Assembly: GCA_025594325.1 (NCBI GenBank)
Contig: JANHCV010000011.1
Span: 1,426,001 to 1,490,000, forward strand
Direction: 5' to 3'
DNA from: Blastocladiella emersonii ATCC 22665
Lineage: Eukaryota > Fungi > Blastocladiomycota
DNA: 64,000 nt
Shown here: one piece after another, positions 4,677 to 44,331 of the stretch
Numbering within the stretch: the stretch's first letter is position 1
How the letters are laid out: each line of letters starts with the position of its first letter
Position numbers and translations under genes: made by a program
Notes under the pieces: model-generated
What the model saw: the letters and a program-made list of their open reading frames with translations, nothing else
The model's database searches: none
What the model was told of the DNA's origin: nothing

Positions 4677-4729
4677 GCGCCTTGGAATTGATGGTCATAT
4701 GTGCGCCTTGGAATTGATGGGGCATATGA
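4677..4729 (+). repeat. 26-bp tandem duplication
   Basis: gcgccttggaattgatggtcatatgt followed by gcgccttggaattgatggggcatatga. Confidence 0.85.
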
Positions 4730-21072: not shown

Positions 21073-21086
21073 TGCAACGTATCGAC
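21073..21086 (+). promoter_or_regulatory. TGCAACGTATCGAC 5' motif
   Basis: Ends 4 nt before ATG 21091; exact match to 10121-10134. Confidence 0.5.
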
Positions 21087-21090
21087 TACC

Positions 21091-23183
21091 ATGCCGCCCG
21101 CCGCCCCCGCCTTCACCCGAGGTGCGGCCTCACCGCGGACCGCCGCCGCCACTCGATCTCTCACGGCCGCGTCGGCACTCTCGTAGAGTCGATCTGGGCG
21201 TGCCTGCCCGCCACCACGCGCGGTCAGCCCGTCCAGCTCGACGCCCACCCCGCCGGCAAGTCGTTCCTCTACACCAACGGCCGCTCCGTCATCATCCGCG
21301 ACCTCGCCGTGCGTGTCTCGCCCTCCTCGCTCGCCCCTTCTCTCCTTGCGCAAACTCACACCTGTACTCTCACAGCACCCCGAGCTCGCTACCGAGTACA
21401 CGGGACACTCGTTCGGCGTCAACGTCGCCCGCTTCGCTCCCTCGGGCTACTACATTGCCTCGGGCGGTACGGCCCACCCCCTACCCGTTACCCGCAACCA
21501 CGACCAACCCCCACTCACACTCGCGCACCCCCACATCCAGACGTCCGCGGCAACGTGCGCATCTGGGACGCCACCCAGCCCGAGCAGATCCTCAAGGCAG
21601 AGTACCAGCCCCTCTCGGGTACCATCAACGACCTCACCTGGGACTCCGAGTCCAAGCGCCTCATCGCCGTCGGTGACGGCCGCGACAAGTTCGGCCACGC
21701 CTTCGCCTTCGACACGGGCTCGTCCGTCGGCGAGATCGTCGGCCACAACAAGGTCGTCAACGCCGTCTCCATCCGCCCCTGCCGCCCCTTCCGCGCCGTC
21801 ACCTGCTCCGACGACATGACCGTCAACTTCTTCAACGGCGTCCCCTACAAGTTCGCCCACTCCATCTCCGACCACACCCGCTTCGTCACCTCGGTCCGCT
21901 TCAGCCCCAACGGCGCCCACTTCGCCTCGGTCGGCCTCGACGGCAAGATCTTCCTCTACGACGGCGCCACGGGTAACAAAGTCAAGGAGGTCACCGACCC
22001 CGACGCCCACCACAAGGGCGGCATCTTCGCCCTCTCGTGGTCGCCCGACGCCAAGCAGTTCATCACCTCCTCGGCCGACTCCACCGTCAAGCTGTGGGAC
22101 GCCGAGACCAGCAAGGTCGTCAACACCTGGCACCTCGACCCCAACGCCTCCTTCGGCATCCACCACCAGCAGGTCGGCAACCTGTGGCGCGGCGACTGGC
22201 TCCTCTCCACCTCGCTCTCGGGCGACATGCACTATCTCGACCCCAAGACTGGCGCCGTCGCACGCACCGTCACCGGCCACCAGAAGAACATCACCGCCAT
22301 GACCTTCCACGCCGACTCGCGCACCCTCTTCACCGCCTCCTACGACGGCAACGTCCGCGCCTGGCACGAGGACGCTGCCGACGCCGGTGCGACCGCCACG
22401 GCCGTCGCGGGCGACGCCGCCACCACCACGCAGGTCCAGGACCTGACCCTCGCCGCCAAGGACGACGACGCCGCCCACGTCATCGCCATCGACATGGACG
22501 ACACCCTGCGCACCATCCGCGGCACCGCCTTCGCGGGCGCCGCGACCAAGCTGCCCGCCCAGCCCTCGTCCGTCGCCGCGGCCAACGGCGGCACGCGGTA
22601 CGTGGCCACCACGGGCGGCGTGTTCGCCGTGTCCGCGTCGGGCGCCACGACCCCCGTCACCACGGCCCCCGCCAACGTGACCGTCGTCGCCACGTCGGCC
22701 GACCGCATGCACCTCGCCATGGGCACCGCCGACCGCACCGTGGTCGTGGCCGCGCTCGACCCCGCCACGGGCGTCGTGACCAACCCGGCCGTCGCCAAGT
22801 TCGAGAACTCCAAGGGCGCCGTGACCGCCATCGCCTTCGAGCCGACCGCGGGCAACCTGCTCGCCGTGGGCGACGCCGGCGGCAAGATCCTCGTCTACAA
22901 CATCGCCGACGCCGCCATCGCCCTCAACCAGTGGGTGTTCCACACGGCGCGCATCACCAGCGTCGCGTGGTCCGCGTCGGGCAACCACGCCGTGTCCACG
23001 TCGCTCGACACGGCCGTCGCCGTCTGGTCGCGCGCCGCGCCCATGCAGCACGTCATGATCCGCAACGCCCACGTCGACGCCGCGGTCTCGGCCGTGTTTG
23101 TCGGCGACGACGTGGTTGCGAGCGCGGGCGCCGACGGGTGCGTCAAGCACTGGAAGATTGCCAAGATGCCCGGCTCCGCCTGA
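21091..23183 (+). CDS. AIP1: Actin-interacting protein 1 (WDR1), WD40 repeats
   Basis: PATTRGQP, YTNGRSVIIR, ASGDVRGNVRIWD, DLTWDSESKRLIAVGDGRDKFG, RPFRAVTCSDD, FFNGVPYKF. Confidence 0.95.
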
Positions 23184-26287: not shown

Positions 26288-28040
26288 ATGGTAACGCGAA
26301 TGGATAACTCATGGAATTATGGCGAAACTTATCCGAGGGACCGGCGCCTGTAGTCGTCCCGTGTACCCGACGGCTGCACCCTCGTGAGGGCGCAGGACAG
26401 GCGAACGCTCGCGACCTTTTACGATGTCAGACCGGATTCTACCCTTGGTGCACCGTCGAAACAGCTGTGCGAACTGCTCGTCGGTTCTAATCACCCGTGT
26501 GGGTCTTCGCTGTGGAAGAAGCTGGGTGGAGTGCGACTGCGCGGGTGTATCGGCTTCCAGGTGGCCGAGGACGTCGTGTACACCTGTTCCAGCGATAGCG
26601 GACAGCTCGAATCGACTCCGGTACTCTTGAGCTCTCAATCCACGGACGTGCAGTCGCGCCCCGCCCCACTCATCATCAACGACCTCGGAAAACCGCCTTC
26701 TGCCTGGTGGGTCCCGACCCAACCGTGCACAAACGACATCTGCGGCCCCGGTCAGTCCTGGTACCAGCGCGCTATCTCGGAAAGAGCAGGCGCAGAAAGC
26801 TTCCTTCACGGATGCCTCTTCGCCGATGCCAGCAGCACCGTTCCCTCTGCCTGCGTTTGGGCTTCACATCGGGAAAAAGACCCACGTGTCCTCTACTCTA
26901 CGACCTGTATCCACAACAATGTCAACTACACGACGCTTGAGAGCATTGTCGATGCGCTCGTTCCGGAAGTCAAACTTGCCGCGGCGCCCACTTCGCCCAT
27001 GGCCCCCTCCGCCACGGACGATACCAACGGCTCGCTTTCACCGCCATCTGCCTCACCCACTCCCCAACCGAGCTCCAGCTCGGCCGTTCCCGTAATTGTG
27101 GCTTCGCTCGCTGGGGTACTTGGCCTCTTCGCGGTACGTGTCCCATCGCTGCTGCATGTGCTCCGAACTCACGGTATCAACGCCGTTCCTCTAGCTCGTC
27201 GCCCTCTTCTTCGCTTTCCTCCGTCGTCGCTCCAAAAAGGATGATGAGCGCCGCCGCCGCGCCGAGTCGCTCATGGCTGGCCCCATCAACGACTCGACCA
27301 CCGACGACCACACCGTCGTCAACGTTGCCGGATCGTCGCGTGCGGGTCCTGGCTCGTTGGCCGGCTCGCCCGCCGTGTTCGCTGGTTCACTGACCGGCTC
27401 GCCCGCCGTACGTGCTGGTTCGCTGGCCGGCTCACCCGCCTTGCTCGCGAAACCGCTTCCCGCGACACCGTACTTTGACATCACCCAGCTCGACTCCATC
27501 ATCGTGCCTTCCGCTGCGGTGCCGGTTTCGCCCAATGGCGATCTATTCGATGACAACTCGCTCCAGGTCCTCGCCGACGAGTGGGAATCGCTCTTCAACC
27601 GCCTCGAACACGTCGCAACTCGCTCGCTTCCGCTTACTACGCCGGTCTCGCCCCATGCTTCTGCCGAGGAGATGCTTGTGCGCACGGCCGAGTTCCGCGC
27701 TCGTCGCGCGCGCCACGTCGAGGACCTCTCGTCGGCCGTCTGGACGAGTCTGGCGCGACCGCCGCCCGAGGGCGACCGCTTTGGCCGCGAAGTGCTCGAG
27801 CTCGCGAACGCCATGCGTGACGTGCTTGCCCGACTTCAGCCTCGGTACCCATCGATTGCCCTCGCACACGTCTTGGCACACTCTCCGTTGCAGACGCTCC
27901 CGCACACGGCCTACACCGTGTACTTTGACGCGTCCGGCTCGTCCGGCGAATCGGCGAACGTCATCAGCTGCCCGTTCCCTGGGTGGATCGACCAAAAGTC
28001 TGGCAAGGTCGTAATCCGCCCTCGCATCACCGTCGATTGA
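26288..28040 (+). CDS. Single-pass membrane protein, family member C; introns 26291-26353, 27134-27194
   Basis: ATG|gtaacg..ctgtag; LCELL..HPC..LW..RGCIG, SFLHGCL, ACVW; TM VIVASLAGVLGLFA|LVALFFAFL then RRR; SLQVLADEWESLF, PFPGW..GKV. Confidence 0.8.
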
Positions 28041-28632: not shown

Positions 28633-31600
28633 ATGAATCCATCATCTATACCACGCGCGATGGGCGGTGGCGGAACGGCGGCCGATCGATCGAACTCGGG
28701 CGGCCAGCGAGTCAACGTCAAAAACGCGCTGCGCGTGAATGCCCTCGAGTCTTCGCTGTTCAGCGTCGCCTACATCACGACGCAGGACAACAACCTGTCC
28801 CCGCTACTCGAGTGGGCCATCACGGTCCGTTGTACCAGAGCCGGAAACCCGCCGATCGCCAACTCACACGCACGCCTTTAGATACTCGAGGATATCCAGC
28901 TCCTCTCCTTCTCGTGGTCAAAGCATCTTCATCATGAAATCCACTGGATTGTTCCGGCCATCGTCGAGCCGGTGCGCTTCCTCAACACCTACGCCAACTT
29001 CTCGGCCGCGAACGTTGTCGCACTCGTCGTGATTGCGCTCTTCGTGTCCCTCCTCGTCGGCGTGAGCTTGCTCATGTCACGACGCGTCAAGATTCCGACT
29101 TCCGTCCTCCAGTCGCTTCGTATCATTTCGCTCCTACTCATGACCGTGTGCAGCATCCCCGCCACGAGCCTGCTCGTCGGTGGCCTGCACTGCATCAACG
29201 GCGTCGTTCCCGAGTTTGGCGTCTCCTGCACGGGACCGACGCACCTTCCGCTCCTCGTCCTCGACATCCTCGCGTTCGTGGTGTTTTCGCCGCTGATCAT
29301 CATCAGCAGCCTCGTGGTACGTCACATCTCTTCAATCCGGTCCCCAAACCCTGCTCACCCGCGCTCGTTTATTTGTTTTGTTTGTTTTTTGTAGTTCATT
29401 GATTCGTCGCCCACGAGCGAGAGCCCGCTGGCTCGTTCACACGGCCGACTCGACATGCAGGCCACCATGATACGGATCCTCTTCGTGTTTCTTGAATACT
29501 TTATGGCCGACGTCGGCGACTGGGGTCCGTGGGTCTACATGATTCTCGTCACGGCCGGCCTGTACCGCCTTGCCTTCCAGTTCGCCCGCATCCAGCCCTA
29601 CTACAACGAGCACATGACGTGTATGCGGTCCGGCTTCGCGTCCGCTGGCGCCACGTCGACGTTCGTGACCTTCACCATCCACCTGGCCGGCGAGCCTGAC
29701 GGGGCCTGGGTCGCTGTCTTCCCGGCCGCCGCCGTCGGCTTCATCGCTGGTTTCGTCGCCTCGCGCTGGTACATTGCCCACTACTTCAGCCGCACCATCC
29801 AGCACTGGTTCCGCATCACTAAGGAGCAGCTCGGCTCCGCTCCGCCCAACCAGCCGCCGGTGATGAAGCGGCGGAGCAGCGTGGCGGGTTTCTTTGACGA
29901 CTGGTATGCGTCGCACCCTCGGTCCAAGGTCGCGGCCAACGACATGCTTCCGGCCATGTCGCTCAGCCCGCCGACGCTCGACCACATGCCCAAGGCCAAT
30001 GATTCGATCGACATGAACGGTGGCCGCGTGGTCAAATCGGCGCTCCTCGACGGGACGAGCATGGACGTGATCAACCTCGCCCGGCAACGGCAGCACAAGA
30101 AGCGCAGTCATGTCTTTGACTCGCCCCTCCAGGTACGATCCCCGGTGCGCAACAATGTGGGCCCACTAACCTGACTCTCGTTCCTGCCGTGTAGGTCGAA
30201 GTCTGTGCGTCGCTGACCTTGGTACATCCACAACTCCGTGTTCACTCACGCACTGTTCCTGTTCCTTAGGCATTCGGTTTGTCCGATCCAACCCGACGCC
30301 GCAACAAGTCGCCCTCGGTCTGGAACTGCTCGACAGGGGACTCGAGGAGAACCCACGCGATCCTCTCCTCCTCCTTCAGGCCAGCACGTACTTTGCGTCG
30401 TTTTACGGCGTCGAGGGCCAGCTCGCGTCGCAGGAGCTCATGCGGCAGCTGCAGCAGAGTCGGCGATCGGTGCCGCTCGACGTCAAGTTCCAGCTGTTCT
30501 CTCGCGAGCGCTCGGCGCGCAGCCGCGGCGAAGGTATCCTCGACCAAACCGCGATCGAAGTACTTAGTCACCAGGCCCGCCTGTACCACCTGCGCGCCAT
30601 GTACACGGTCCGCGACTTCTTCGAGTCGATCCGCGTCGCGACGTCCATCAAGCAGCTGTCGCGCGTCACGGCCCAGCTCGCCGAGTACCAGTACAACGCG
30701 TCCGAGTCCTACACGCGTCTTCTCGCCCGCAACTCGCGCGACAAGAACATCCTCCGCAGCTACGCCCAGTTCCTCACGCAGGTCGAGGCTGACACGGCTC
30801 GCGCGACGCAGATTCTCGAGTTTGCCGAGGAGGGTACGAAGCAACCGTGCTCCCACCACGTACGATCCGAATTACTCACACATCCCATCCGTTACTAGTC
30901 GAGGCCACCGAGGCCAGGCATCATTCGCGTCTCGACAACGGCGGTGGCGGGCTCGCGGGCATGGCCGGTTCGCCTTCCTCGCAGCTCTCGCCATCACCGC
31001 ACGGCCTGTCGCCGATGCACGCGCTCAACCTGTCCGCCGCCCAGGACGATCAGTCGCCCATGGCGCCCATCAAGGCCGACCCGGAGCTGCACCTCGCCAA
31101 CGGTCGCCACATGACCGTTTCTGAGACGTCGCTCTCCGCCAACTCGCCCGACTCGACCAGACGCGAGCGCCGTGTATCGTCGGGCCCCGTGTCGTTTGAC
31201 GACGCGCTCAACGCCGTCGGCAAGGCGCCGCTCAACCGCGTGCCGTCCGAGGCCCCCATGATGCGCGACGATAGCTTTCCGGGCGGTCCGCCGGGCGCGC
31301 CGCGCGTTGTCCTCGGCGGCGGATCGCAGACTTCGGGCACGTCGGCGAGCCGCGCGCAGCGACAGCGGATCCAGGCGCGCCGCGTGCTGACGGAGCGCAT
31401 CGCCAAGCCGCTCGGGCGCGCGTGGGAGGTGGTCGGGTCGACCGCCGTCTTCCTCGGCTGCCTCTCGGCGGGCTTCGTGATCTGCCTCAACTTCCTTCAG
31501 CAGACGGGCGTGGTCCTCGACCGATACACGACGATGCGGTCCGCGCGCACCGCCATGCTCTTGATTGTCGAGGCGATGCGCTCGATGATCTACGCGTCGT

Positions 31601-33220
31601 ATACCAACAGTCCGGTGCGGTACCAGGCGGCCCTCAAGACGCTGAACGTGTCGGGCCTCCAGCCCGCTTTCCAGGTTCTCCCGTCCATGGCGCAGTGGAC
31701 CGCCAAGTGGACCGTCCAGCCGCCCGTGTACCGCATGATGAAGTCGATCGTCATGGGCAACACCACCGACTACGTCCCGCTCGACATGATGCCGATGGAC
31801 GCCTTCAAGGCCGTGATCCAGGCCGGCAACCGCGCCATCAACTTCACGGCGCCGCTCTCGCTCACGTACCTCGAGTTCAACTCCAACGCCGACACGCGCT
31901 TCATCGCCGAGAACATCTTCAACGTATTCGACGCAGTCCGCACCCTGTCGCAGTCCATGGTCGAGTACCGCCTCCTGGTCGCCAACTCGTTCTCGGTCAT
32001 GATGACGTGCCTCGGAGTGACGCTGGTCGCGCTGGTCGCGCTGGCCGTCGTCGTCTACTACTTTGTCTTCCACCAGTTCTTTGCGCGCGAGGACCGTGTC
32101 CTGCAGCTCCTGCGCGCGCTGCCCAAGCGCGCCGCTTCGACCATCGTCACGTCGCTCGAGGAAGAGATCGAGTCGTTCCGCGAGGTCACGGACGGCGGCG
32201 ACGACGAACTCAGCAACCTCGACGTGCGCGCTGTCAGCATCGACCGCGAGACGGGCGCCGCGCAGCCGCATCGGTCCCGTTATTATCTGTTTATGACCGC
32301 CGCCGGATCGCTGCTCGTCGGTCTCGCCGTCCTCTTCATGTTCCTCGTGACGCTGCAGTACGCTTTCTTGTTGCCCCCTCTGCATCGCCTCCAGTTGACC
32401 AACTGACACGCGTGTTCCTCAGATCGACCTCGGTGCAGATGGACATGGACCGCCTGATCAAGACCAGCGACCGACGACTCTTTGTGATTTCGGTCCGGAT
32501 CATGGGGAACGAGTTCCTGATGCCGGCCGACCAGGTCCTGACCGCCGGTGCGTCACGCTCGGTCAAGTACGCTGTCCGAGCTTTGCTGACCTCCCGCTCG
32601 CCCATGTAGACATGGGGCTGCAGTACTGCCGCAGCGGCCTCTACGACTTCAAGACCCTCCACACTGCGCTGATCAACGATCCCGACGGCCTGTCCACCAC
32701 GTTCCCGTCCATGACGGTGTTCCCGCGCGATTGGAGCAAGCCGCCCGCCATCGTCGAGCAGCCGGACATCGGGTTCACCAAGGCGACGGCCTCGGTCCCG
32801 CTCAACCAGCAAATGGACCAGTTTCTCGACGTGGCCACGCGGGCGGTCAACGGCATGGCCCTCGGCCTGAGCAACGACCCGACCCAGCGCCGCGATTGGG
32901 CTCTAGCCACGGCGCTGTCGTACGACGTCCAGAACCGGCTCATCGACCTGCACACGGCGATCCGCGACGTCATGGCCAACACGGTCGCGACCACCGTGGC
33001 CCAGTGCATCACGATGTTCGCCGTCACGCTGGCCGTGCTGGCCGTGTGGGCCGCGGCCGCGGCGTGGTTCGGCGCGCGACGGCTGCGGCGCGAGGCGAGG
33101 ACGCTGGCCACGCTCCTGTACCTGATCCCGCCGGCTATGCTCAAGGAGGTGCCCGAGGTCGCCAAGCTCATCGACTCGGCGGGCATCACGCTCGAGTTCT
33201 CCTCTGGCCGCGTCGACTAG
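28633..33220 (+). CDS. TmcB/TmcC-like multi-pass membrane protein with TPR-like helical region; multiple introns
   Basis: N-terminal TM bundle (LEDIQLLSFSW...RFARIQPYY), LDVKFQLFSRER, YTRLLARNSRDKNILRSYAQFL, S..SGTS linker, further TM pairs, LYLIPPAMLKEVPEV end. Confidence 0.75.
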
Positions 33221-33317: not shown

Positions 33318-36272
33318 TCAGAACCGCGCGGCGTCGACGAGCGCCTGCGCGCCAGCCTTGACCAGCTTCTGCGCGGCCTCGAGCCCGCTCGTGGCCGTGG
33401 TGGCGAGGTGCTGCTTGCCGTCGACGCTCCAGACGTGGGCCTCGACCTCGATCTTGCCGTCATCGCGGCGCACCGTGTTCACGGCGACGGGGACCTGGCA
33501 CCCGCCCTGGATGGCGCGGAGGAAGTCGCGCTCGTGGTCGCACGTCAAGCGGGTCTCGGCGTCCTCGATCGCCTTGACGAGGCGGTGCATACCGGCGTCG
33601 CGCGCGCGGATCTGCACGCCAATGGCGCCCTGCGAGACGGCCGGGACCATGACGGCGGGATCGATCGGCTGGACGTGCACGCCGGCGAGGGCCTCGGTCG
33701 CGTTCGGGAGGCGCGCGAGGCCGGCGACGGCGAGGACGATCGCGTCGTAGTGCACGTCGGCAGTCGCGGCGTGGGTGCCGAGGAGCTTGGCGATGCGCGT
33801 GTTGAGGTTACCGCGGACGTCGATGATGCGGAGGTCCGGACGCGCGGCGGCGAGCTGGGCGCGGCGGCGGAGCGACGAGGTGCCAACGGTGGCGCCCGAG
33901 GGCAGGGACTCGATGGTGTAGGCGTGGCCGGCGCGCGAGACGAGGGCGTCGCGCTTGTCCTCGCGGGCGAGCACGGCGCCGAGGGCGAGCGCGGGCGGCT
34001 GCGTGGTCTCGAGGTCCTTGAGCGAGTGCTGGACGAGCGCGACGGCGCCCGACTGCAGCGCGACCTCGAGCTCCTTGGTGAACAGACCCTTGTCGCCGAT
34101 CTTGGCCAGCGCGACGTCGAGGATCTTGTCGCCCTTGGTCATGACGCCGTCGATGCGGAAGCGGTGCGCGGGCTGCGGGTTCCATCCGCTGGTAGCTGAC
34201 GGGGCGGGCGTGCGCTCGGCGGCGGCGGCCTGGTGCGCGACGAGGGCCTTGTGCACGATCTCGGCCTGGGCCATGGCGAGCGGCGAGTTGCGCGAGCCGA
34301 GGACAATGGTCTGGGCCTCCTCGACAAAGGCGCCGACGGACTCGGTCGACATGTCGAGCTTGGTGCCGTGGCCGAGGTTGACAATGTAGCGGTGCTTGCC
34401 GAACTCGCGGATCATGGCGCGCACCTTGGTGCGGATGTTGTCGAGCGGCTCGTACATGACGTCGGGCTCGAGGTTGCCCTGGAGCGTCATGTAGGGCCCG
34501 GCGGCGGCGCGCTGCTCGGCGGGGATGCCGGCCCAGTCGATGGAGATGGCGTCGTACAGCGTCTCCTTGACGATGCGGGCCGTGGCGAAGTTGGCGCCGC
34601 GCGGGAACACGGTCATGGGGATGTGCGGGTGCACGGCCTTGACCCTGCGGGCGATATCGGCGAGGTAGGGCAGGGCAAACTCGTAAAAGTCGGTCGGCCC
34701 GAGGTCGACGGCGTTGGACTCGAAAACCTGCACGATGTCGGCGCCGGCGTCGACCTGCTTGCACAGGTAGTCGATGGCGACGTCGGTGCACTTGCGGAGC
34801 AGCAGGTGGGCCCACTCGGGGTGCATGTGCAGCCACTTCTTGGCGAGGTCCTTGCCGATCATGTAGGCCATGAGGGTCCAGGGCGCGCCGCAAAAGCCGA
34901 CGAGGGCCTTGTCGCGTGGGAGCTGGGCGCGGGTGAGGGTGAGGGCGTCGTAGACGTGCTGCAGGATGGCGGGCTGGTAGGCGAGGCGCTCGATGTCCTC
35001 GAGGGTGCGGATCGGGTGCGGGAAGAAAGGACCGGGCTGCATGATGAGCTCCATGCCGAGAGCCTGCGGGATGGTCATGATGTCGGAAAAGATGATGGCG
35101 CAGTCGACATTGTACCGCCACACGGGCTGCAGGGTGATCTCGGTGGCGATGGCGGGGTCGGCGGTCATTTCGAGGAAGTTCTTGTCGCCCTTGACCTGGC
35201 GGTACTCGGGGAGGTAGCGGCCGGCCTGGCGGTGGAGCCAGACGGGCGGGCGCGGCACGCTCACGCCGCGGAGCGCCTGCACGAACAGCGTCTCAATGTA
35301 CGTGTGGCGCGGGGCGATGGTGGCAGTCGCCATGGAGCGAGCACGGCGGGGTGCGGCAGCGACGAAATCGGTGCCCTGGGCGGCGACGGTCGCGGTCGGG
35401 AAGGCGGCGTTGGGCGGCAGGCACGCGGCGGGGAGGCCGGCCGCGAACAAGGCGAGAGCCAGCTCGCCGCGACGGGCAGCGACCCAGGCGTCCTCCTCGG
35501 GCGTCAGGGGCGCTGGCGGGGGCGGGAGGTCGAAGGTGGCGGGCGGCGAGACGTAGTCGGCCTCGCCGAGCTCGACGGCCTGGACGGCGGCGGCGTGGCG
35601 CGCAACGGTCGCGATGTAGGCGGTGAAGAGCGGGATCACGACGGCGTGGGCGAGGCCAGCCGAGTCGGTGCCGGCGAGCGGCAGGTCGGCGCGCAAACCA
35701 CCGATACCGCGGTAGGCCTTGCCGTCGGCGGCGCGGAAGGCCTCGTCGGCAGCGCGCTTGACGGCGGCGTAGTCGGCGCTGTGGGCGATGGCAACGTCAC
35801 GGGCGGCCGTGTGCCAGTCGAGAGCATCGTCCTCGTTGATGAAGTAGGGGAGCAGCTCGGCCTCGACGCGGAGGGCGGCGGTGGGCACGGACGAGGCGGC
35901 GACGGGCGAAGCGGGCTTCGGGGACGCCCCACTGTTCTTACGGCCACTGCCACGACGGTTGCGCGACTGCTGCTTCGGAGAGGCCGAGGGGCTCGCCTCA
36001 GCGGGTGCGGCGGCGGCAGCGACCTCGACCTTGGACCACGAGATGCGGACGGCGGAGGCGAGGGGCGACTTGGGCCAGCACACGAGGTGGGCGACGTCGG
36101 GGGTCGGGCGGACGAGGACGGCGCGCTCGAAGAGGGACGAGGCGGTCAGGGCGGCGAGGTCGACGAGGTCGCGGTCCGCGGCGGCCGAGACGGCGGCGGC
36201 GAGGCGCGACGCTTCCTTGGTGGCCTCGAGGGCGACGATCGCGGCGGCGATCTCGGAGACGAGGCTCGGCAT
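33318..36272 (-). CDS. Heme-pathway fusion (984 aa): degenerate HemF/CPOX-like domain + uroporphyrinogen decarboxylase + porphobilinogen deaminase
   Basis: One uninterrupted ORF. UROD: PVWLHRQAGRYLPEY, IIFSDI, GFCGAPWTLMAY, NLGHG. PBGD: LGSRNSPLAMAQ, TKGDKILD, KGLFTKELE, HSLKD, GTSSLRR, RGNLNTR, GGCQVP. N-part: LLPYFINEDDALDWH, RGIGGL, RRG. Confidence 0.93.
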   Translation of the reverse strand: MPSLVSEIAAAIVALEATKEASRLAAAVSAAADRDLVDLAALTASSLFERAVLVRPTPDVAHLVCWPKSPLASAVRISWSKVEVAAAAAPAEASPSASPKQQSRNRRGSGRKNSGASPKPASPVAASSVPTAALRVEAELLPYFINEDDALDWHTAARDVAIAHSADYAAVKRAADEAFRAADGKAYRGIGGLRADLPLAGTDSAGLAHAVVIPLFTAYIATVARHAAAVQAVELGEADYVSPPATFDLPPPPAPLTPEEDAWVAARRGELALALFAAGLPAACLPPNAAFPTATVAAQGTDFVAAAPRRARSMATATIAPRHTYIETLFVQALRGVSVPRPPVWLHRQAGRYLPEYRQVKGDKNFLEMTADPAIATEITLQPVWRYNVDCAIIFSDIMTIPQALGMELIMQPGPFFPHPIRTLEDIERLAYQPAILQHVYDALTLTRAQLPRDKALVGFCGAPWTLMAYMIGKDLAKKWLHMHPEWAHLLLRKCTDVAIDYLCKQVDAGADIVQVFESNAVDLGPTDFYEFALPYLADIARRVKAVHPHIPMTVFPRGANFATARIVKETLYDAISIDWAGIPAEQRAAAGPYMTLQGNLEPDVMYEPLDNIRTKVRAMIREFGKHRYIVNLGHGTKLDMSTESVGAFVEEAQTIVLGSRNSPLAMAQAEIVHKALVAHQAAAAERTPAPSATSGWNPQPAHRFRIDGVMTKGDKILDVALAKIGDKGLFTKELEVALQSGAVALVQHSLKDLETTQPPALALGAVLAREDKRDALVSRAGHAYTIESLPSGATVGTSSLRRRAQLAAARPDLRIIDVRGNLNTRIAKLLGTHAATADVHYDAIVLAVAGLARLPNATEALAGVHVQPIDPAVMVPAVSQGAIGVQIRARDAGMHRLVKAIEDAETRLTCDHERDFLRAIQGGCQVPVAVNTVRRDDGKIEVEAHVWSVDGKQHLATTATSGLEAAQKLVKAGAQALVDAARF

Positions 36273-37151
36273 GGTAAAGGGACAGCAGCAGGGACCCTGG
36301 AGGTGCGTGGAGAGTGAGCGGGCGGGTTCAGCGGACCGAGGGATCGCGGGAGCAGCTGCAGCAGCAGCAGCAGCAGGCGCGGGAGCAGGGCGACGGACGC
36401 GGACAGTGTTGGGCGCGATGGTCGGTGCGGGTAGCGCGGCGGCGACGACGCCAGACGCGGCGAGGACGAGGCCGTAGGCCAGCGAGCAACAGAGCGGGCA
36501 CGGCGCCATGAAGAACCGGACTAGTGACGGTCTAGACGCTCACGGCTGTCGGTGGATGGTCGCCGCCGTCAGTCGAGCGCTCGTCGTTGCCGTTGCCGTT
36601 GCTGTCGAGGGCCGTGCGATCCGGCGTGGCAGCGCTCTGCTGCTGCTGCTGCTGCTGCTGCATCCGTGTGATCCATGGCAGGGGCGGGGAATACTCACCT
36701 AGCGACGATTCAGAGTCGGGCGCTACGAGGTGCAGCTCGACGATCGGTCCGGCGGTGGGTGAGGGGGAGAGAGAAGGGATCGCGGAGGGCAGCAGCGCTT
36801 AGGATCGGCTTGGTTGGTCAGGCCAGCTCAGAGGTTCAGAGCCGCGGGCCGCGCGACAGCCGAGACCCGCGTATGAGGTTTTCGCAAGGTTTTCGCCCCG
36901 CCGTGACCTGATGTTGATCGCAAAACCGGGTCACATGCGCCGGCCGAGCACTGCGTCGTGACGAGCGGCCTGGCCACTCTACGCTCGAGGCGCTCGCTTC
37001 CGCTGCCCTCCAGTCGCTCTACCACGTAGCTCACACGAATCGACACCACGGAACTCGCTGCATCGTGCCCGCCCCCGCCCCGCCCACGCATCGACCGGGA
37101 CCGCCGACCACTTGAGAACCCGAAAACCCCGAACCGCAGCCGTAACCCATC

Positions 37152-37865: not shown

Positions 37866-39825
37866 ATGGACTCGTTCGGCCTCCCCTACGGCTCGGTCCA
37901 TGCTCGCCTCCGCGACGCCGAGCTGCGAGGCCTCTCGCGCCTGCGCCAGGGCAGTACGTCCCGTCCCCGCATCACCTTGCATATGCCTCTCGCTAAGTGT
38001 CATCGTCGTAGCGAGCACCCGCCCGCGCCTTCTCGACCTCGTCAGCAACCCGCGCATGTACCACGCCTGCGTCAACACGGCCATGGTCCCCGTCCCGACC
38101 TACGCCGCCCACTACGCCCCCAAGGCCACGGGCACCCGCTTCCTCGCCACCGCCGACGAGGCCGGCACCGTGTGCGTGCTCGACACGGACAACGACCCCG
38201 AGTCCATGCTCGTCGCCCGCTTCACGGCCCACGCCAACGCCATCTTTGACGTGCAGTGGCACCCGACCGACCCGTGCATCGCCACCGCCTCGGGCGACCA
38301 GACCGTCGTGCTGTGGGACCTCGAGCGCCAGTCGTCGGTCGCGCTCTTCTCGGCCCACAAGTCGTCGGTCCGCTCCGTCGCCTTCAACCCCTTCGACCCC
38401 GCCATGCTCGCCACCACCTCGCGCGACGGCTCCATCATCATCTGGGACACGCGGTGCGCCGGTGTCGCTATGGCCAACGGCGCCGGGACCGCGTTCGGCG
38501 CCGCGAACGTGATCCGCCACGCGCACGCCCTGCCCGGGTCCGGCTCGTCGGCCGCCGCCATCTCCGTGTCGGCCGCCGTCTTCACGCGCGAGCGCACCGT
38601 GGCGAGCGCCGGCGCCGGCGACGGCGTGGTGCGCGAGTGGGACGTGCGCAAGCTCGGGTCGCACAACAGCCGCGTGCGCGCGAGCCCCGCGGCCGCGTCG
38701 TGCGACCTGACCGAGGGCCGCCGCGCGCGCCGGTTCGGCCTGACGCACCTGGCGCTCGATGCGCTGCGCGACACGCTGTACGCGGTCGGCATGGACTCGC
38801 GCGTGTACGCCGTAGACGCGACGACGCTCCAGCCGCTGCGCGTGTACGGGTCGCGCCACTTCACGCCGTCGCTGTACACGCGCGCGTCCGTCGACCCGTC
38901 GGGCGCGTTCCTGGCGGTCGGGTCGACGCAGCACAATGCGCTGCTGTTCGAGACGGCGCGCCCGGACCGCGCCCCGCTCGCGCTGCGCCACGGCCACACG
39001 GCCGAGGTGTCGTGCGTGGCCTTCTCGCAGTCGTCGGTCGCCGTGCGCCTCGCCACGTGCTCGGACGACGCCACGGTGCGCATCTGGCGCGAGGCGCCCG
39101 ACGACGCCGACCGTATCCGCAACGCCGGCGCCGCGTCCGCTGGTGACGCTGACCTCGCGTTCAAGTCGTGGGCGTGCGCCGAGGTGGCCGACGACGCGCC
39201 CGCCGAGTTTCCGGACGCGTGGGACCGCGCCGCACACGGGCCCGACGACCCGCACATGGCGGCCGCGCTCGAGCAGGCGGCGGCGGCGGTCGCTGCCATG
39301 GACGTGGACAAGGTCCTCTCGTCGCCCGCCCGCGCGCCGTCGATGCCCGAGCTCGTGGCGGTACACCGGCCCGCGTCGTTTTCGCTGTTCGCGTCGTCCA
39401 ACTCCAGCTCCAACTCGGGCTCGGCGTCGAACCTGCCCGCGCTCGCGCCGAGTGCCGAGGGCGACCACGTCGTCGCGCCCCCTCCACTGCCCGAGGTGCC
39501 CGCCCAGGTACCTGCCGACGTTCCTGCGACGCCCGCTCCCGTCGCCGTGGCACCCACATCCAGCACGGCGGGTGAGGGCAGCACAGCAGGCCGCCGGAAA
39601 CGCACGCTGCTCGACTTTTTCGGGTCTCCGCAGGCGGTTGCGGCCGCCGAGTCGCCGTCCCGCGCGGCTGCTTCGTCGTCCTCGCGTCCAAGCGCGGCCC
39701 GCAGCGCCGGCAACGGCAGCAGCGCGAGCAAGCGGCGCGTCACCGGGTCTGCGTGGACGCCGTCGCGGAGCATGTCGGCTTCCTCGAGCTCATCCTCGTC
39801 GTCGTCCAAGCGCGCCAAGCGATAG
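37866..39825 (+). CDS. CDT2: Cdt2/DTL (DCAF2) WD40 substrate receptor; one short intron near 5' end
   Basis: AHANAIFDVQW, ATASGDQT..LWD, AHKSSVRSVAF, SRDGSIIIWDTR, DGVVREWDVR, GHTAEV, TCSDDATVRIW; basic C-tail. Confidence 0.85.
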
Positions 39826-39905
39826 CCAGCGCGCGCGCAAAACCATTTTGGATCACTAAGTGTACTTTTGATCATATAATATATCCCGCATCCACGCGCC
39901 CTATA

Positions 39906-41232
39906 TTACACGATGACGCGCAGCAAATACTTCATAAACTTCCACATGCCGACGCTGGACTCGACGTTGCCGTGCGGGTCCGTGGTGCGCTCGGGGAAGG
40001 CGATGCCGTAGCCGCGGACGCCGGGGAGTGCGGCGCCTGTGACCTTGTTGACGAGGTCGCCCGTGGCCACGTCGTGGGCGATTTCCCGGACACCGGCGAT
40101 GGCAGGTACAGGCCGCGGGCGGTACCCGACGGCGTAGCAGACGTGGGTGACGCCCGTGAGGTACTTGGCGTAGACGGCGGGCTCGTCGGCCTCGTCGGCG
40201 GGGAGCTGGATGCGGTCGACGCCGACGCGGCGCGCGGCATCGAGGTCCTCGAGGTTGGCCTTGGCCCACTTGGCAGCCATGCCCTTGAGCCCCGTGTTGT
40301 CGTAGAGAATCCAGCCGTCGGGCATGTCGACGGCGTACTTGAGCGGGTGGCGGTGGAACTGGACGACGGGGATCCCGGCGTCGACGAGGTTCTTGACGCA
40401 CAGGATGGCCGAGTGCGAGCCGCCAACGACGGCCACCTTGGCGTCGGGTGTCGCGGCGAGCACGGCGCGCAGGCGCGACGGCGTCAGGCACGTGTCGAGG
40501 TCAATGACGTTGACCGAGGCGGGGACGGGGGACGTGGCGGGCGGCGGGAGCGGCTCGGCGCCCGTGCACAGGAAGACGCGGGCGGCGGACAAGGTGGTGG
40601 AGGCGGGCGCGGCCGAGACGTCGGGGACGCGGGCAAAGTCGTCCTTGACGCCCCCGTGCACGGGGAACGTGTACGCGTCCTCGTTGGCGGCGCGGGTCAC
40701 GTCGCCGGCCCAGCCGCGGAACAGCGTGAGGCGGTCCTTGGGGACGGTGCGCTCGAGGGCGGCGGCGAGGTCGCGGCACAGGCGCTGGGCGTGGACGAGG
40801 TCGCAGCCGACGGACGCGTCCATGGCCTCAAGCGCGGCGAGCGGCGCAGGGACGCCCGGCGGGGTCGGTGCGTGGGCGGCGGCGTGCAGCGCGTCGCTCG
40901 CCTTGGCGAACTCGATGAAGAGGCGGACACGGGTGTTGCTATTAGGCGTTGAGGGCGGTTAGATGCATCCAGAGGGGCGGGTGCGGGGCAGGCAGCACGG
41001 ACCTCGGGACCTCGGGGTACTGCTGCAGACGGCCGCCGGCAAAGGCGGGGTCGATCCAGGCGATGGGCCCGACGCCGAGGTCGAGCAGGCGGCCGACGAC
41101 GGCGACGCCCGCGGGCCCGGCGCCAATGACGGCGGCGGCGAACGGCTTGGCGGGGGCAGCGGACATCATGGTCGAGGACAGGGACAGGTGGCGGGCAAAG
41201 AGCGAGGTGCGGCGGATGGCGGCAGTGGACAT
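39906..41232 (-). CDS. FAD/NAD(P)-binding pyridine nucleotide-disulfide oxidoreductase-like protein; one intron
   Basis: VIGAGPAG, EVPSNT, VFLCTGAEP, VAVVGGSHSAIL, YAVGY, GYGIAFPE; N-terminal mitochondrial-like leader. Confidence 0.8.
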
Positions 41233-41595: not shown

Positions 41596-42357
41596 ATGAA
41601 GCAGCCGCCGAGCGTATTCGACTTGAACATAGAACCGACCGCCCCCATGGCCTCCTCCGCGCACCGGCTCCGCATCCTGTGCCTGCACGGCTACACGCAG
41701 AACGCGGCCGTCTTCTCCAAGCGCACAGGCGTGCTGCGCAAGCACCTCAAGGGCAAGGCCGACTTGGTCTACATCAGCGCCCCGCACGCCCCCGACAGCT
41801 ACGTCGCGTCGCCCGACATGGACCCGGCCGAGGGTACGCCCATCCCGCCTTGAACCCTGCTACTGTATAGCGAACTCACGCCGCACACGCGGGTAGAGGG
41901 CCAGCGCGCGTGGTGGAACATGACCGATTCCCCGACGGGCCCCGTCTACTCGGGCTTCGACGCGGGGCTCGCGCACGTCGCGTCGGCGCTCGACGCGCAG
42001 GGTCCGTTTGACGGGATCCTGGGCTTCTCGCAGGGCGCGGCCATGGCGGCGCTCGCGGCGCTGCGGGTTCCGCACCCGTCGCTCAAGTTTGTCATCTGCG
42101 TGTCCGGGTTCGTGAGCCGCGACCCGGCGCACGCGCCCTGGTACGAGCCCGCGGGCGGGTGCACGGTGCCGTCGCTGCACGTCTGGGGCACGGCCGACGC
42201 GTGGGTGCCGCCCGCCAAGAGCATGGAGCTCGCCCGTGCGTTTGCGAGCCCGACCGTGTTCGAGCACGGCGGCGCCCACTACGTGCCCATGGACGCGGCG
42301 GGCAAGGCCGCCGTCGCCGACTTTCTCGCGCCGTTTCTCGACGGCGGCAAGATGTAA
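41596..42357 (+). CDS. FSH1/OVCA2-family serine hydrolase; one intron
   Basis: RILCLHGYTQN, RAWW, GPFDGILGFSQG, PSLHVWGTAD, HGGAHYVP. Confidence 0.9.
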
Positions 42358-42430
42358 TAGTGCTAAGTGGTTCCCATTATATAAAAAAGTGTTTACACGA
42401 GTGAGTCAAAATTGCTTCTCGACCGCAAAG

Positions 42431-43393
42431 CTATTCCGAGGCGGGCGCGGGCGTCGAGGACGAGGTGGCCGAGACTGTCCGGGACGGCGGACGCACAATG
42501 GGCCCGTACGAGGCCATGGGCCCCTGGCCGGCCACGTACTCGGCGGGGAGCGGCGGCACGGGCGGGACGGCCAGCGACGCCGCGTCGGGGGCGGCGGCAA
42601 GGGCAAAGGTGGCGGCGAGCGACGCGTGCGGGAAGGCGCGGGCCACGGCGCGCACGGCGCTCCCAATGTCGAGGTAGGTGGCGGCCGTGGCACGCGCGGC
42701 GAGATGGCAGCGCTCGAGCAGGTGCGGCAGGCGGCGCTCGGCCAGGTCGTCGCCCACGACCATGTTGGCAGCCTCGACGCGCTTAATCTCCATGGCGATA
42801 CCGTTGAGCAGGGTGAGCGACTGCTGGTAGGCCATGAGGTCGCGGTGCTTGGCCTTGCGCGTCTTCTGGGCGGTCGCCTCGGCGTCCTTGAGCTGGCGGG
42901 CAAGCTGGTCGAGCTTGGCCTCGTTCTGGCGCTGCGCGGCCACGGCGTCGGCGTGGATGGCCTCAATGTCGGCGAGGAGCGGGGTCTCGAGCTCGCGGTA
43001 GAGGCGGTCGCCGAGCGCCGTGTGGGCGCGGGCGAGCGAGGCGACGAGGGCGGCGAGGAACTGCAGGTCACCCTCCTCGGCGGGGAGCAGCTCGCGGGCC
43101 GAGGAGCGGCAGCCGCGCAGCGAGGCGAGGACGCGGTGCATGGTCTCGGCGGTGGTGGCGACCATCTGCACGGCGGTGCGCAGGTCGCGGGCGGCGCGGG
43201 CCAAGTCCGCGTACTGGATGAGGTTCATGCGCGGGACATCGGAGGGCAGGGCGGCGAGGGCGGCGGGGACCGAGGAGTGGAAGAGCGAGGGCCGTGGCTC
43301 GGACGCCATGCTGCCGGAGTGGTGCGAGTGGGTCGAGTCGTTGGAGGACCGCGTGAAGGTGCGTTGCAGGGTGGCCTGCAGCGACGATATCAT
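42431..43393 (-). CDS. Ivy1-like I-BAR/IMD coiled-coil protein
   Basis: All-helical 320 aa; LETPLL, KTRKAKHRDLMAYQQSLTLL resembles the Ivy1 K..RNL..YR.SL motif. Confidence 0.6.
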   Translation of the reverse strand: MISSLQATLQRTFTRSSNDSTHSHHSGSMASEPRPSLFHSSVPAALAALPSDVPRMNLIQYADLARAARDLRTAVQMVATTAETMHRVLASLRGCRSSARELLPAEEGDLQFLAALVASLARAHTALGDRLYRELETPLLADIEAIHADAVAAQRQNEAKLDQLARQLKDAEATAQKTRKAKHRDLMAYQQSLTLLNGIAMEIKRVEAANMVVGDDLAERRLPHLLERCHLAARATAATYLDIGSAVRAVARAFPHASLAATFALAAAPDAASLAVPPVPPLPAEYVAGQGPMASYGPIVRPPSRTVSATSSSTPAPASE

Positions 43394-44331
43394 TCGAGTG
43401 CGTTGCAGCGAGTAGCGGTGCGGTCGGGGAGAGTGTGCGAGGGCGGGAGGAAAGGTTACGAGAGTGGAGCAGTGCAGGCTTGCGAGCAGCCGAGGAGGCG
43501 CGTTTCAGATACCGGGTGGCGCAACCGGCTGCCTGCCACGCCCATCACGGGCCGCAGGCGTGGGAACGCGAGATCATCGCGGCCATCACGGCACGTTCGT
43601 TGCTCCGGCTCCGGCACCTTCTTCTTCCCTCGATCGAAGCGGCGAAAACACAGGGAGCAGCATCCGGTGAGTTGCGTCGGCGTGCAGGTGGCGGCGGCGT
43701 GCCCGAACCGGGGTCGAGGTTGTGAGTCCCCGAGTCTCGCTCGGAGCACGCTCTCGACCAGAACCCCTGTTCTCGACTAGGCACGCGTGCGCGTGCTCGC
43801 GCGGCGTGAATGACGCGATGCACGCGTCGCGCGGAGAGGGGAGGGCCAGCACACATAAGGTGCCGACCCGCCCCGCTCCCCCTCGGCCGCCGGCCCTCAG
43901 ACAACTGACCATCGTCGCGACGCGCACAGTAGCCCTCTGGTGCGTGTGCTCCGAACCATGGCCGTGGCCGCGGCATCGACGCTGCCGACGCGGGCCGCGG
44001 ACATCAATGGCAGGGCAGCGGCAGGTGATGCTCCGCGTGTTGCGCGGTCGCAGCCACAGGCGCGCGGCGGGCCGACCAAGCCCTCGGTGCCGTCGCGCGC
44101 CTCGGTGATCGCCTGCAGCTGCGCCGGCCGCCGCCGCAGCCGCCGCCGGATGCAACGGCCAGCTGTGACTGTGATTCGGCGACCACTGACTGACGAGGAC
44201 CCGCATCACCGTGGCGGCGCGCAGTGTCTTCTCCCGAATCTCGAGTGCATTGAGCGCGGGCGTGTGCGTGCTCGGATATAGCCTGATCGATCGCAGCGAG
44301 GAGCGCGAGGTCGCGTAAGCAAGGCTTCCGC

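What the first reader, a model, noticed from the sequence alone, without database searches (positions are those of the whole stretch)
33318..35300. UROD (HemE) fused in frame to PBG deaminase (HemC), skipping the intervening pathway step
Seen: the UROD end (NLGHG...AFVEEAQ) runs directly into PBGD (TIVLGSRNSPLA) at ~34310 with no linker, stop or intron. Catalytic motifs look intact (RQAGR, FSD, AY, GHG; HSLKD, cofactor Cys in GGCQVP). Known: these are normally separate genes (yeast HEM12 and HEM3) and non-consecutive steps, with UROS between them. Inference: scaffold for a cytosolic heme metabolon that recruits UROS to protect labile hydroxymethylbilane.
Basis: partly seen in the sequence, partly recalled or inferred. 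Interest (0 to 1): 0.85.

Follow-up and report, generated by a model that had tools for sequence, protein, structure and literature searches.

The report
Fused heme enzymes in a water mould
A zoosporic fungus makes two non-adjacent heme-pathway enzymes (uroporphyrinogen decarboxylase and porphobilinogen deaminase), plus a dead copy of a third, as one protein; the fusion is real and shared by a whole fungal lineage and some other protists, but I found no paper on it.

Summary
One uninterrupted ORF (33318-36509, minus strand) runs from UROD straight into PBGD/HMBS at 34308/34307, with no linker, stop or intron. All catalytic residues I checked in both enzymes are intact.

The protein has three parts. 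A diverged HemF-type coproporphyrinogen oxidase (CPOX) domain precedes UROD. It keeps the CPOX fold but has lost His258, Asn260, Arg262 and Arg401 (human numbering).

The same architecture occurs in every Blastocladiomycota genome sampled (Blastocladiella, Catenaria, Allomyces, Sorochytrium, Paraphysoderma, Coelomomyces) and in both sanchytrids. UROD-PBGD without the CPOX-like part occurs in Thecamonas, the choanoflagellate Barroeca and uncultured eukaryotes. One 25%-GC metagenome contig carries an apparently intact CPOX-UROD-PBGD. Misassembly is therefore excluded. No standalone blastoclad UROD or PBGD turned up in the database searches.

My best reading is two active enzymes on one rigid chain, with UROS acting in trans. 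There is no transcript evidence for this organism.

These proteins are already in public databases, but I found no paper describing the fusion. The scan separately noted the dead CPOX-like domain on this same window. Interest is moderate.

The parts
33318..36272 (-). Whole coding sequence as annotated for this genome (984 aa = P0001; stop at 33318-33320). Single exon.
   Evidence: ORF. (P0001 is 100% identical, 984 aa). (M80 of the ORF lies at 36272). (homologues' N-termini align to this start).
35322..36272 (-). N-terminal CPOX (HemF)-like domain, P0001 aa 1-317. The fold is kept but the catalytic residues are lost. Contains a disordered Ser/Pro/Arg-rich insert (P0001 aa ~85-130, window 35883-36020).
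   Evidence: Pfam PF01218: 31.2 bits in the whole ORF, 34.1 bits for the domain alone, cut-off 31.8. A profile of blastoclad N-domains hits human CPOX at E 1.5e-19. AF2 pLDDT 78.6, and the top 19 Foldseek PDB hits are all HemF CPOX. Residue table. GC3 0.90.
34308..35321 (-). Uroporphyrinogen decarboxylase domain (ORF aa 397-734, P0001 aa 318-655).
   Evidence: Pfam E 5.5e-106. TIGR01464 above its cut-off. E 1.7e-86 to human UROD. R37, R41, D86, Y164, S219 and H339 equivalents all present.
34305..34310 (-). Fusion junction: the last UROD codon (Gln, 34308-34310) and the first PBGD codon (Thr, 34305-34307). Zero-length linker.
   Evidence: The junction is collinear in 16 fusion proteins. In the AF2 model, helix 643-654 runs directly into strand 655-661.
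33321..34307 (-). Porphobilinogen deaminase / hydroxymethylbilane synthase domain (ORF aa 735-1063, P0001 aa 656-984), with a lineage-specific insert at window 34173-34250.
   Evidence: Pfam PF01379 and PF03900. TIGR00212 above its cut-off. E 3e-58 to human HMBS. R26, S28, Q34, K98, D99, R149, R150, R167, R173 and C261 equivalents all present.
36273..36509 (-). In-frame upstream extension of 79 codons, open but probably not translated (5' leader).
   Evidence: GC3 is 0.70 here against 0.90-0.96 in the three domains. It is absent from the annotated protein and not conserved in homologues.

Best explanation
This is a genuine single-exon gene of a Blastocladiales fungus. It encodes one 984-aa chain with three domains in the order CPOX-like, UROD, PBGD/HMBS. 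UROD (heme step 5) and HMBS (step 3) are both catalytically competent. They appear to be this lineage's only detectable copies. They are welded together with no linker: the last UROD helix continues straight into the first HMBS strand. The N-terminal domain descends from an oxygen-dependent coproporphyrinogen oxidase (step 6). It keeps the fold but has lost the catalytic His/Asn/Arg residues, so it is most likely a pseudo-enzyme with a structural role (inferred: dimerisation or docking). UROS (step 4) is not part of the protein and must act in trans. On this reading the fusion gives equimolar co-expression and co-localisation of pathway enzymes, not direct channelling (inferred). The fusion arose at or before the common ancestor of Blastocladiomycota and Sanchytriomycota. 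It plausibly came from a fully active CPOX-UROD-HMBS tri-enzyme like the one seen on an uncultured eukaryote's contig (inferred).
For: The ORF is continuous and the domains abut.
Coding-type GC3 (0.90-0.96) is uniform across all three domains.
The same three-part architecture is present in B. britannica, Allomyces arbusculus, Sorochytrium, Paraphysoderma, Coelomomyces and a JGI sequence, and in Catenaria by tblastn across the junction.
Amoeboradix and Sanchytrium also carry the fusion.
The fused UROD domains of this group form one clade, SH-aLRT 99.
All checked UROD and HMBS catalytic and cofactor residues are kept in the fusion sequences that cover those positions (one S219->T in P0018; one peripheral HMBS Ser varies).
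Domain-only searches found no standalone blastoclad UROD or PBGD, only fragments of the same locus.
CPOX homology: profile E 1.5e-19, and the fold search returns only HemF structures at the top.
H258, N260, R262, R401 and the GGG motif are replaced in the window's protein, while P0018 keeps all of them.
The full-length AF2 model has pLDDT 89.6 and pTM 0.90 with a continuous helix-to-strand junction.
No HEM4 domain was found in the protein or the window.
Against: There is no transcript or protein evidence for this organism. No RNA run holding this DNA is served, and metatranscriptome contigs gave only scraps of <=84 nt.
No enzymology exists.
I could not search the rest of the genome, so I do not know whether a canonical UROS, an active HemF/HemN-type CPOX, or a divergent standalone UROD/HMBS exists.
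Some relatives keep the His258 equivalent (Allomyces, the JGI sequence, Coelomomyces). Glu at the Asp282 position and Arg332 are widely kept, so residual or altered activity of the N-domain is not excluded.
Proteolytic processing is not excluded.
Confidence: 0.75

Rival explanations
1. The fusion is a scaffold for a cytosolic heme metabolon. UROS docks between the HMBS and UROD active sites, so labile hydroxymethylbilane and uroporphyrinogen III are handed on without release.
For: The two flanking enzymes of the UROS step are fixed rigidly together.
The same enzyme pair has also been joined in the opposite order in Propionibacteriaceae, and UROS-UROD and PBGD-UROS fusions exist. This suggests selection for proximity around this part of the pathway.
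Henry et al. 2016 (PMC4921024) link fusions of neighbouring enzymes to unstable intermediates, including hydroxymethylbilane.
Against: There is no evidence of any UROS contact.
No UROS-like segment is present in the protein or the window.
In mammals no complexes among cytosolic PBGS, HMBS, UROS and UROD were found in pull-downs (PMC13564367).
Fusion as such does not prove channelling (PMC4921024).
Confidence: 0.2
2. The N-terminal domain is still an active, though highly diverged, coproporphyrinogen oxidase. The protein would then be trifunctional (steps 3, 5 and 6).
For: The CPOX fold is retained and the domain is conserved across the lineage with coding-type GC3.
Glu at the Asp282 position and Arg332 are kept, and His258 is kept in three relatives.
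An apparently intact tri-enzyme exists (P0018).
Against: In the window's protein H258->R, N260->S, R262->S, R401->A, and the GGG and YDRGT motifs are gone.
The domain evolves much faster than the other two: 46% identity to B. britannica against 84% for UROD and 66% for PBGD.
In sanchytrids it is reduced to about 150 aa.
The NCBIfam HemF equivalog scores 25 bits against a cut-off of 297.
Confidence: 0.07
3. Artefact: a misassembly or read-through of two adjacent genes, or a polyprotein that is cleaved into separate enzymes after translation.
For: There is no RNA or protein evidence for this organism.
Public annotations of Catenaria and Allomyces macrogynus list only fragments.
Against: The identical junction occurs in at least 10 independently assembled genomes.
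Those fragments are explained by frame disruptions (Catenaria) and an N-gap (A. macrogynus) in the assemblies.
There is no linker that could hold a cleavage site, and the junction sits inside continuous secondary structure.
No Met is placed so that a complete HMBS could start independently (sequence).
Confidence: 0.04

Closest known systems
Stand-alone eukaryotic UROD (yeast HEM12, human UROD; PDB 1URO/1R3Q) and HMBS/PBGD (yeast HEM3, human HMBS; PDB 3ECR/7CCX)
   Same: Same families and the same catalytic and cofactor residues. About 47-49% (UROD) and 42-48% (PBGD) identity to the nearest stand-alone proteins in the database searches; strong matches to human UROD (E 1.7e-86) and human HMBS (E 3e-58).
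   Different: Here both lie on one chain. The UROD C-terminal tail and the HMBS N-terminal tail are trimmed away so that the domains abut, and an extra CPOX-like domain sits in front.
UROD-PBGD two-domain proteins of Thecamonas trahens (P0013), the choanoflagellate Barroeca monosierra (P0363) and uncultured eukaryotes (P0014-16, P0364, P0365, P0369)
   Same: Same domain order (UROD then PBGD) and intact catalytic residues. In Thecamonas the junction lies in a single exon.
   Different: They have a 3-6 residue linker instead of none, and no CPOX-like N-domain. They fall in separate places on the UROD tree, although a single origin of all the fusions is not rejected (AU p 0.09-0.13).
Intact CPOX-UROD-PBGD protein on a 25%-GC metagenome contig (P0018, locus L002)
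   Same: Same three domains in the same order.
   Different: Its CPOX domain is canonical (E 1.4e-72 to human CPOX, all active-site residues kept). It is very divergent, on a long branch, and its organism is unknown.
Bacterial tetrapyrrole-enzyme fusions: HemC-HemD (PBGD-UROS), HemD-HemE (UROS-UROD), HemA-HemC, CobA-HemD, HemH-HemQ of Cutibacterium acnes, and a reverse-order PBGD-UROD in Propionibacteriaceae (P0510)
   Same: They are fusions of pathway enzymes around the unstable hydroxymethylbilane and uroporphyrinogen intermediates.
   Different: Most join consecutive steps. They are bacterial and phylogenetically separate from the eukaryote-type UROD found here.

Membership tests
Uroporphyrinogen decarboxylase (HemE/UROD; PF01208, TIGR01464) | Full-length match to the family model above the curated cut-off | tested here: met
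   PF01208: 354.9 bits (cut-off 23.9). TIGR01464 equivalog: 341.6 bits (cut-off 302.95)..
Uroporphyrinogen decarboxylase (HemE/UROD; PF01208, TIGR01464) | Substrate-binding and catalytic residues (human R37, R41, D86, Y164, S219, H339; residue list from my own knowledge of the human UROD structures) | tested here: met
   All six are present in the window protein (P0001 R348, R352, D397, Y470, S519, H635). They are kept in every fusion sequence that covers the position, except one conservative S219->T in P0018.
Uroporphyrinogen decarboxylase (HemE/UROD; PF01208, TIGR01464) | Decarboxylation of uroporphyrinogen III to coproporphyrinogen III | not testable with these tools
   Needs an enzyme assay or complementation of hem12.
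Hydroxymethylbilane synthase / porphobilinogen deaminase (HemC; PF01379+PF03900, TIGR00212) | Both domains match above the curated cut-offs | tested here: met
   PF01379: 218.1 bits. PF03900: 48.9 bits. TIGR00212: 258.7 bits (cut-off 164)..
Hydroxymethylbilane synthase / porphobilinogen deaminase (HemC; PF01379+PF03900, TIGR00212) | Dipyrromethane-cofactor cysteine and catalytic Asp/Arg set (human C261, D99, R26, R149, R150, R167, R173) | tested here: met
   P0001 C925, D753, R661, R802, R803, R820 and R826. All are invariant in the 16 fusion proteins.
Oxygen-dependent coproporphyrinogen oxidase (HemF/CPOX; PF01218, NF003727) | Homology and fold | tested here: met
   Profile of blastoclad N-domains against human CPOX: E 1.5e-19. 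7 of 8 N-domains hit PF01218. The top 19 Foldseek PDB hits are all HemF, TM ~0.4-0.5.
Oxygen-dependent coproporphyrinogen oxidase (HemF/CPOX; PF01218, NF003727) | Full-length family match above the curated cut-off | tested here: not met
   Only profile positions 125-217 of 295 match. Score is 31.2 bits in the whole ORF (cut-off 31.8) and 34.1 bits for the isolated domain. The NCBIfam equivalog scores 25.1 bits against 297.
Oxygen-dependent coproporphyrinogen oxidase (HemF/CPOX; PF01218, NF003727) | Active-site residues (human S244, H258, N260, R262, D282, R332, R401; list from my own knowledge, numbering checked against PDB 2AEX) | tested here: not met
   In the window protein: H, R, S, S, E, R, A at these positions. 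Only R332 is kept, and D282 is conservatively replaced by E. The intact comparator P0018 keeps all seven.
Uroporphyrinogen-III synthase (HemD/UROS; PF02602) | Any HEM4-like segment in the fusion protein or nearby | tested here: not met
   No PF02602 hit at E<=1 in the ORF. A HemD profile built from 29 bacterial HemC-HemD proteins gave no hit better than E=2.4 in five representative fusion proteins (including the window's) or the window's six frames. That profile has low sensitivity for fungal UROS.

The most novel reading that the evidence does not exclude
The protein is the core of a true porphyrinogen-channelling machine. The rigid UROD-HMBS pair would bind the organism's UROS between the two active sites. 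The dead CPOX-like domain would still bind tetrapyrrole or pair with the real oxidase, so that PBG is converted to coproporphyrinogen III (and handed on) without free intermediates. It would be a natural 'Rosetta stone' for a cytosolic heme metabolon, which pull-downs have not found in mammals. A more extreme variant is that the CPOX-like domain has itself taken over the UROS role in a lineage lacking canonical HEM4 (I put that at <=3%).
Probability: 0.12. Interest if true: 0.8.

Novelty: new variant of a known kind. Interest (0 to 1): 0.55.

Why it matters
Heme-pathway enzymes are textbook stand-alone proteins in eukaryotes. A 2026 review of the field states that no complexes among the cytosolic enzymes (PBGS, HMBS, UROS, UROD) have been found, and lists protein-protein interactions as an open question (PMC13564367).

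A conserved natural fusion of HMBS and UROD has several notable features:
- It carries a fossil of CPOX.
- It appears in several lineages of Obazoa.
- A reverse-order version exists in bacteria.

Together these predict that proximity of these enzymes is advantageous. The fusion also offers a ready-made protein for testing channelling around the unstable hydroxymethylbilane and uroporphyrinogen intermediates.

It is also a clean shared derived character uniting Sanchytriomycota with Blastocladiomycota, and an example of an enzyme domain decaying into a pseudo-enzyme within a multi-enzyme protein.

The practical novelty is tempered, because the sequences are already in public databases under uninformative names.

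Tried and rejected
1. Transcript evidence. No served RNA run holds this DNA. Four metatranscriptomes laid at 80% likeness gave only pieces of <=84 nt that do not bridge the junction. This was uninformative.

2. Literature. Seven full-text searches and checks inside six papers found no description of a UROD-PBGD or CPOX-UROD-PBGD fusion. The 2006 B. emersonii EST paper has no held supplements.

3. UROS. No HEM4 domain is in the protein. A home-made bacterial HemD profile found nothing in the window or the fusion proteins. This is a weak test, because fungal UROS is very divergent.

4. Stand-alone CPOX, UROS or HemN elsewhere in the genome. This could not be tested, because only the window is available and the eukaryotic genome cannot be searched with these tools. 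[quoted passage not shown]

5. Single versus multiple origins of the fusion. The UROD and PBGD trees place the fusions in 2-5 places. AU tests do not reject one clade of all fusions (p 0.09 and 0.13), nor blastoclad fusions grouping with other fungi (p 0.17). This is unresolved.

6. ESM Atlas look-alikes of the N-domain. The best score was 0.43, which is not informative.

7. Misassembly and gene-merge artefact. Rejected on cross-species conservation.

8. The 1227-aa bacterial ORF P0072 carrying HemC/HemD/HemB plus the start of HemE. It has a different order and an 860-aa gap, and looks like an operon read through in a high-GC MAG. I do not count it as a comparable fusion.
Full report
**The observation**

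The window contains a single open reading frame on the minus strand, 33318-36509, of 1063 codons with one terminal stop. Given the local base composition, a stop-free run of that length has a chance of about 1.6e-10.

Pfam places the domains as follows:
- URO-D at ORF residues 407-733 (E 5.5e-106).
- The PBGD cofactor-binding domain at 735-974 (E 1.2e-64).
- The PBGD C-terminal domain at 988-1057.

NCBIfam's equivalog models for hemE and hemC both pass their curated cut-offs. There is no stop, frame change or spacer.

The reading frame does not begin with UROD. The genome's own annotated product (P0001, 984 aa, 100% identical) starts at the ORF's Met80, window 36272. The 79 codons further upstream are open but have GC3 of only 0.70, against 0.90, 0.96 and 0.96 in the three downstream parts. 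They are not conserved in relatives, so they are most likely leader sequence.

Between Met80 and UROD lie about 317 residues that hit Pfam Coprogen_oxidas weakly: 31.2 bits in the whole ORF and 34.1 bits alone, with a cut-off of 31.8. The homology is nevertheless solid:
- A profile of eight such N-domains hits human CPOX at E 1.5e-19.
- An AlphaFold model of the domain (pLDDT 78.6) retrieves only HemF-type CPOX structures as its top 19 PDB matches, with E 1e-6 to 1e-4 and TM ~0.4-0.5.

I used P0018, a fusion protein whose N-domain is a canonical CPOX (E 1.4e-72 to human CPOX), to carry human numbering across. On that basis the window's protein has:
- Arg, Ser and Ser in place of His258, Asn260 and Arg262.
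- Ala in place of Arg401.
- No GGG or YDRGT motif.
- Arg332 retained, and Glu at the Asp282 position.

The domain also evolves much faster than its neighbours. Identity to Blastocladiella britannica is 46% for the N-domain, against 84% for UROD and 66% for PBGD. I read it as a pseudo-enzyme that keeps the CPOX fold. This agrees with an earlier first-stage note on the same window (s1-076268), which I tested independently here.

**Are the two enzymes intact?**

- UROD aligns to human UROD at E 1.7e-86. The equivalents of R37, R41, D86, Y164, S219 and H339 are all present.
- HMBS aligns to human HMBS at E 3e-58, with HSLKD on D99. The equivalents of R26, S28, Q34, K98, D99, R149, R150, R167, R173 and the cofactor Cys261 are all present.
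- In an alignment of 16 fusion proteins, the core HMBS residues are invariant. The UROD residues are kept wherever the sequence is complete, with one S219->T in P0018.

The residue lists come from my own knowledge of the human structures. The numbering was checked against the PDB alignments.

**Is it an artefact? Distribution**

I ran a search restricted to proteins long enough to hold both enzymes. It found the same CPOX-like/UROD/PBGD architecture in:
- Blastocladiella britannica (75% identity).
- Allomyces arbusculus.
- Sorochytrium milnesiophthora.
- Paraphysoderma sedebokerense.
- Coelomomyces lativittatus.
- A JGI sequence.

Catenaria anguillulae is annotated only with a 'partial' PBGD. 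However, tblastn shows the whole three-part gene there, contiguous across the UROD-PBGD junction. It is broken in the public assembly by two frame disruptions, one of them in a C/T homopolymer. The Allomyces macrogynus fragment is explained by an N-gap.

In the UROD tree all these sequences form one clade with SH-aLRT 99, and they also group in the PBGD tree. Misassembly or a merged gene model in this window is therefore excluded. The fusion dates at least to the common ancestor of Blastocladiomycota and Sanchytriomycota.

Domain-only searches returned no stand-alone UROD or PBGD from any blastoclad, only the fragments just mentioned. The next-best hits are 42-49% identical proteins of animals, amoebozoans, other fungi and bacteria. 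The fusion therefore appears to be the lineage's working copy of both enzymes. I could not search whole genomes.

**Beyond this lineage**

An exhaustive HMMER scan of 1.84 billion cluster representatives gave about a dozen clusters in which one stretch spans both enzymes. Pfam and cluster look-ups show:
- UROD-PBGD two-domain proteins in Thecamonas trahens, the choanoflagellate Barroeca monosierra and several uncultured eukaryotes. These have a 3-6 residue linker and no CPOX-like domain.
- In Thecamonas the junction lies inside a single exon and nothing CPOX-like lies upstream.
- One contig with 25% GC encodes an apparently fully intact CPOX-UROD-PBGD.
- A reverse-order PBGD-UROD exists in Propionibacteriaceae. 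UROS-UROD and many PBGD-UROS fusions also exist.

The named eukaryotic carriers are all Obazoa (fungi, a choanoflagellate, an apusomonad). On the UROD tree the fusions fall in several places, but AU tests do not reject a single clade (p 0.09 and 0.13). They also do not reject blastoclad fusions grouping with ordinary fungal URODs (p 0.17). One ancient fusion with repeated fission, and recurrent fusion, both remain possible.

**Structure**

The full-length AlphaFold model, built on a 130-sequence alignment, has mean pLDDT 89.6 and pTM 0.90. The last UROD helix (residues 643-654) leads directly into the first PBGD strand (655-661). Compared with the stand-alone enzymes, the UROD C-terminal tail and the HMBS N-terminal tail are gone. 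The high pTM and the continuous secondary structure suggest that the two enzymes are held in a fixed relative orientation. I could not extract inter-site distances from the model.

**How it most likely works**

Shown:
- One gene with three domains.
- Two domains carrying complete catalytic equipment.
- One degenerate domain.
- Lineage-wide conservation.

Inferred:
- Both enzymes act as independent catalytic modules on one chain.
- UROS, absent from the protein and not detected in the window, works in trans.
- The benefit is equimolar expression and proximity.
- The CPOX-like domain serves a structural role.

A recent review reports no complexes among the cytosolic heme enzymes in mammalian pull-downs (PMC13564367). 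Henry et al. caution that fusion does not by itself produce channelling (PMC4921024). I give it about 0.2.

A still-active N-domain, giving a trifunctional enzyme, gets about 0.07. [quoted passage not shown] If that gene is a true HemN rather than a HemW-like protein, it could supply the missing step. This remains only a lead.

**What is missing**

No RNA-seq run of this organism is served. Laying four metatranscriptomes at 80% likeness gave only short scraps. Expression as one product therefore rests on conservation, on coding-type composition, and on the lack of any linker or internal start.

**Novelty and score**

The enzymes are ordinary and fusions in tetrapyrrole pathways are a known phenomenon. 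The orthologous proteins are already deposited, mostly labelled just 'uroporphyrinogen decarboxylase' or 'hypothetical protein'. Seven full-text searches, and reading inside the most relevant reviews, found no description of a UROD-HMBS or CPOX-UROD-HMBS fusion.

I class it as a new variant of a known kind. It is moderately interesting for three reasons:
- It is a natural test bed for the unresolved question of a cytosolic heme metabolon.
- It is a shared derived character linking sanchytrids and blastoclads.
- It is a tidy case of enzyme-to-pseudo-enzyme decay.

The window's composition and the 1.5-Mb contig are consistent with a long-read Blastocladiella assembly such as that of PMC9730499. 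I did not establish the species.

Noticed in passing
window 36273-36509 (-): A 79-codon in-frame extension lies upstream of the annotated start. It has a hydrophobic beginning followed by an Ala/Pro-rich run. Its GC3 is 0.70 against 0.90-0.96 in the gene, and it is not conserved in relatives. It is probably 5' leader rather than a targeting peptide.
   Followed up: partly
window ~36640-36665 (-): A run of about eight CAG repeats (cagcagcag...) lies about 130 nt upstream of the ORF's first ATG, in the intergenic/leader region.
   Followed up: no
window 37900-39825 (+): The divergently oriented neighbour is a WD40 protein whose best Pfam match is the THOC3 beta-propeller. Gene models of UROD in three lichen-forming ascomycetes (P0019, P0021, P0023) also carry a THOC3-like WD40 part. 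This hints at an old UROD/WD40 gene adjacency, or at merged models there.
   Followed up: no
window 35883-36020 (-) and 34173-34250 (-): There are two lineage-specific inserts. One is a Ser/Pro/Arg-rich segment predicted to be disordered, inside the CPOX-like domain (pLDDT <50). It is also long in Allomyces and absent in the others. The other is a ~25-residue Ala/Pro-rich insert after the first PBGD helix, seen only in Blastocladiella and Allomyces.
   Followed up: partly
L002 (ENA metagenome scaffold, 4208 bp, 25% GC), gene 921-3827: A 968-aa protein (P0018) has a canonical, apparently active CPOX followed by UROD and PBGD. It is a possible living example of the ancestral tri-enzyme. The organism is unknown and the sequence sits on a very long branch.
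   Followed up: partly
L003 (Catenaria anguillulae PL171, MCFL01000012.1), ~3346-6007: The orthologous three-part gene is present but is interrupted by two frame shifts in the public assembly, one at a C/T homopolymer near 4290. Only a 'partial' PBGD is annotated. I cannot tell a sequencing error from a real lesion.
   Followed up: partly
P0510/P0398; P0399, P0451, P0502: A reverse-order PBGD-UROD fusion occurs in a Propionibacteriaceae MAG. Three UROS-UROD (HemD-HemE) fusions come from unnamed Logan/ENA contigs. All fall in the bacterial part of the UROD tree.
   Followed up: partly
UROD trees: URODs of Bacteroidetes/Rhodothermia-type bacteria (Salinibacter, Salinivenus and MAGs; 47-49% identical to the query) nest among eukaryote-type URODs rather than with the other bacterial sequences sampled.
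   Followed up: no
window 30847-32406 (+), 32612-33220 (+), 42236-43780 (+), 39753-40952 (+), 26384-28040 (+): Several long ORFs flanking the gene have no Pfam match at E<=0.001. In a 65-70% GC genome some may be spurious. 45405-49436 (+) has a borderline RhoGEF hit, and 19854-23183 (+) is a large WD40 protein. No other heme-pathway gene lies among the neighbours tested.
   Followed up: partly
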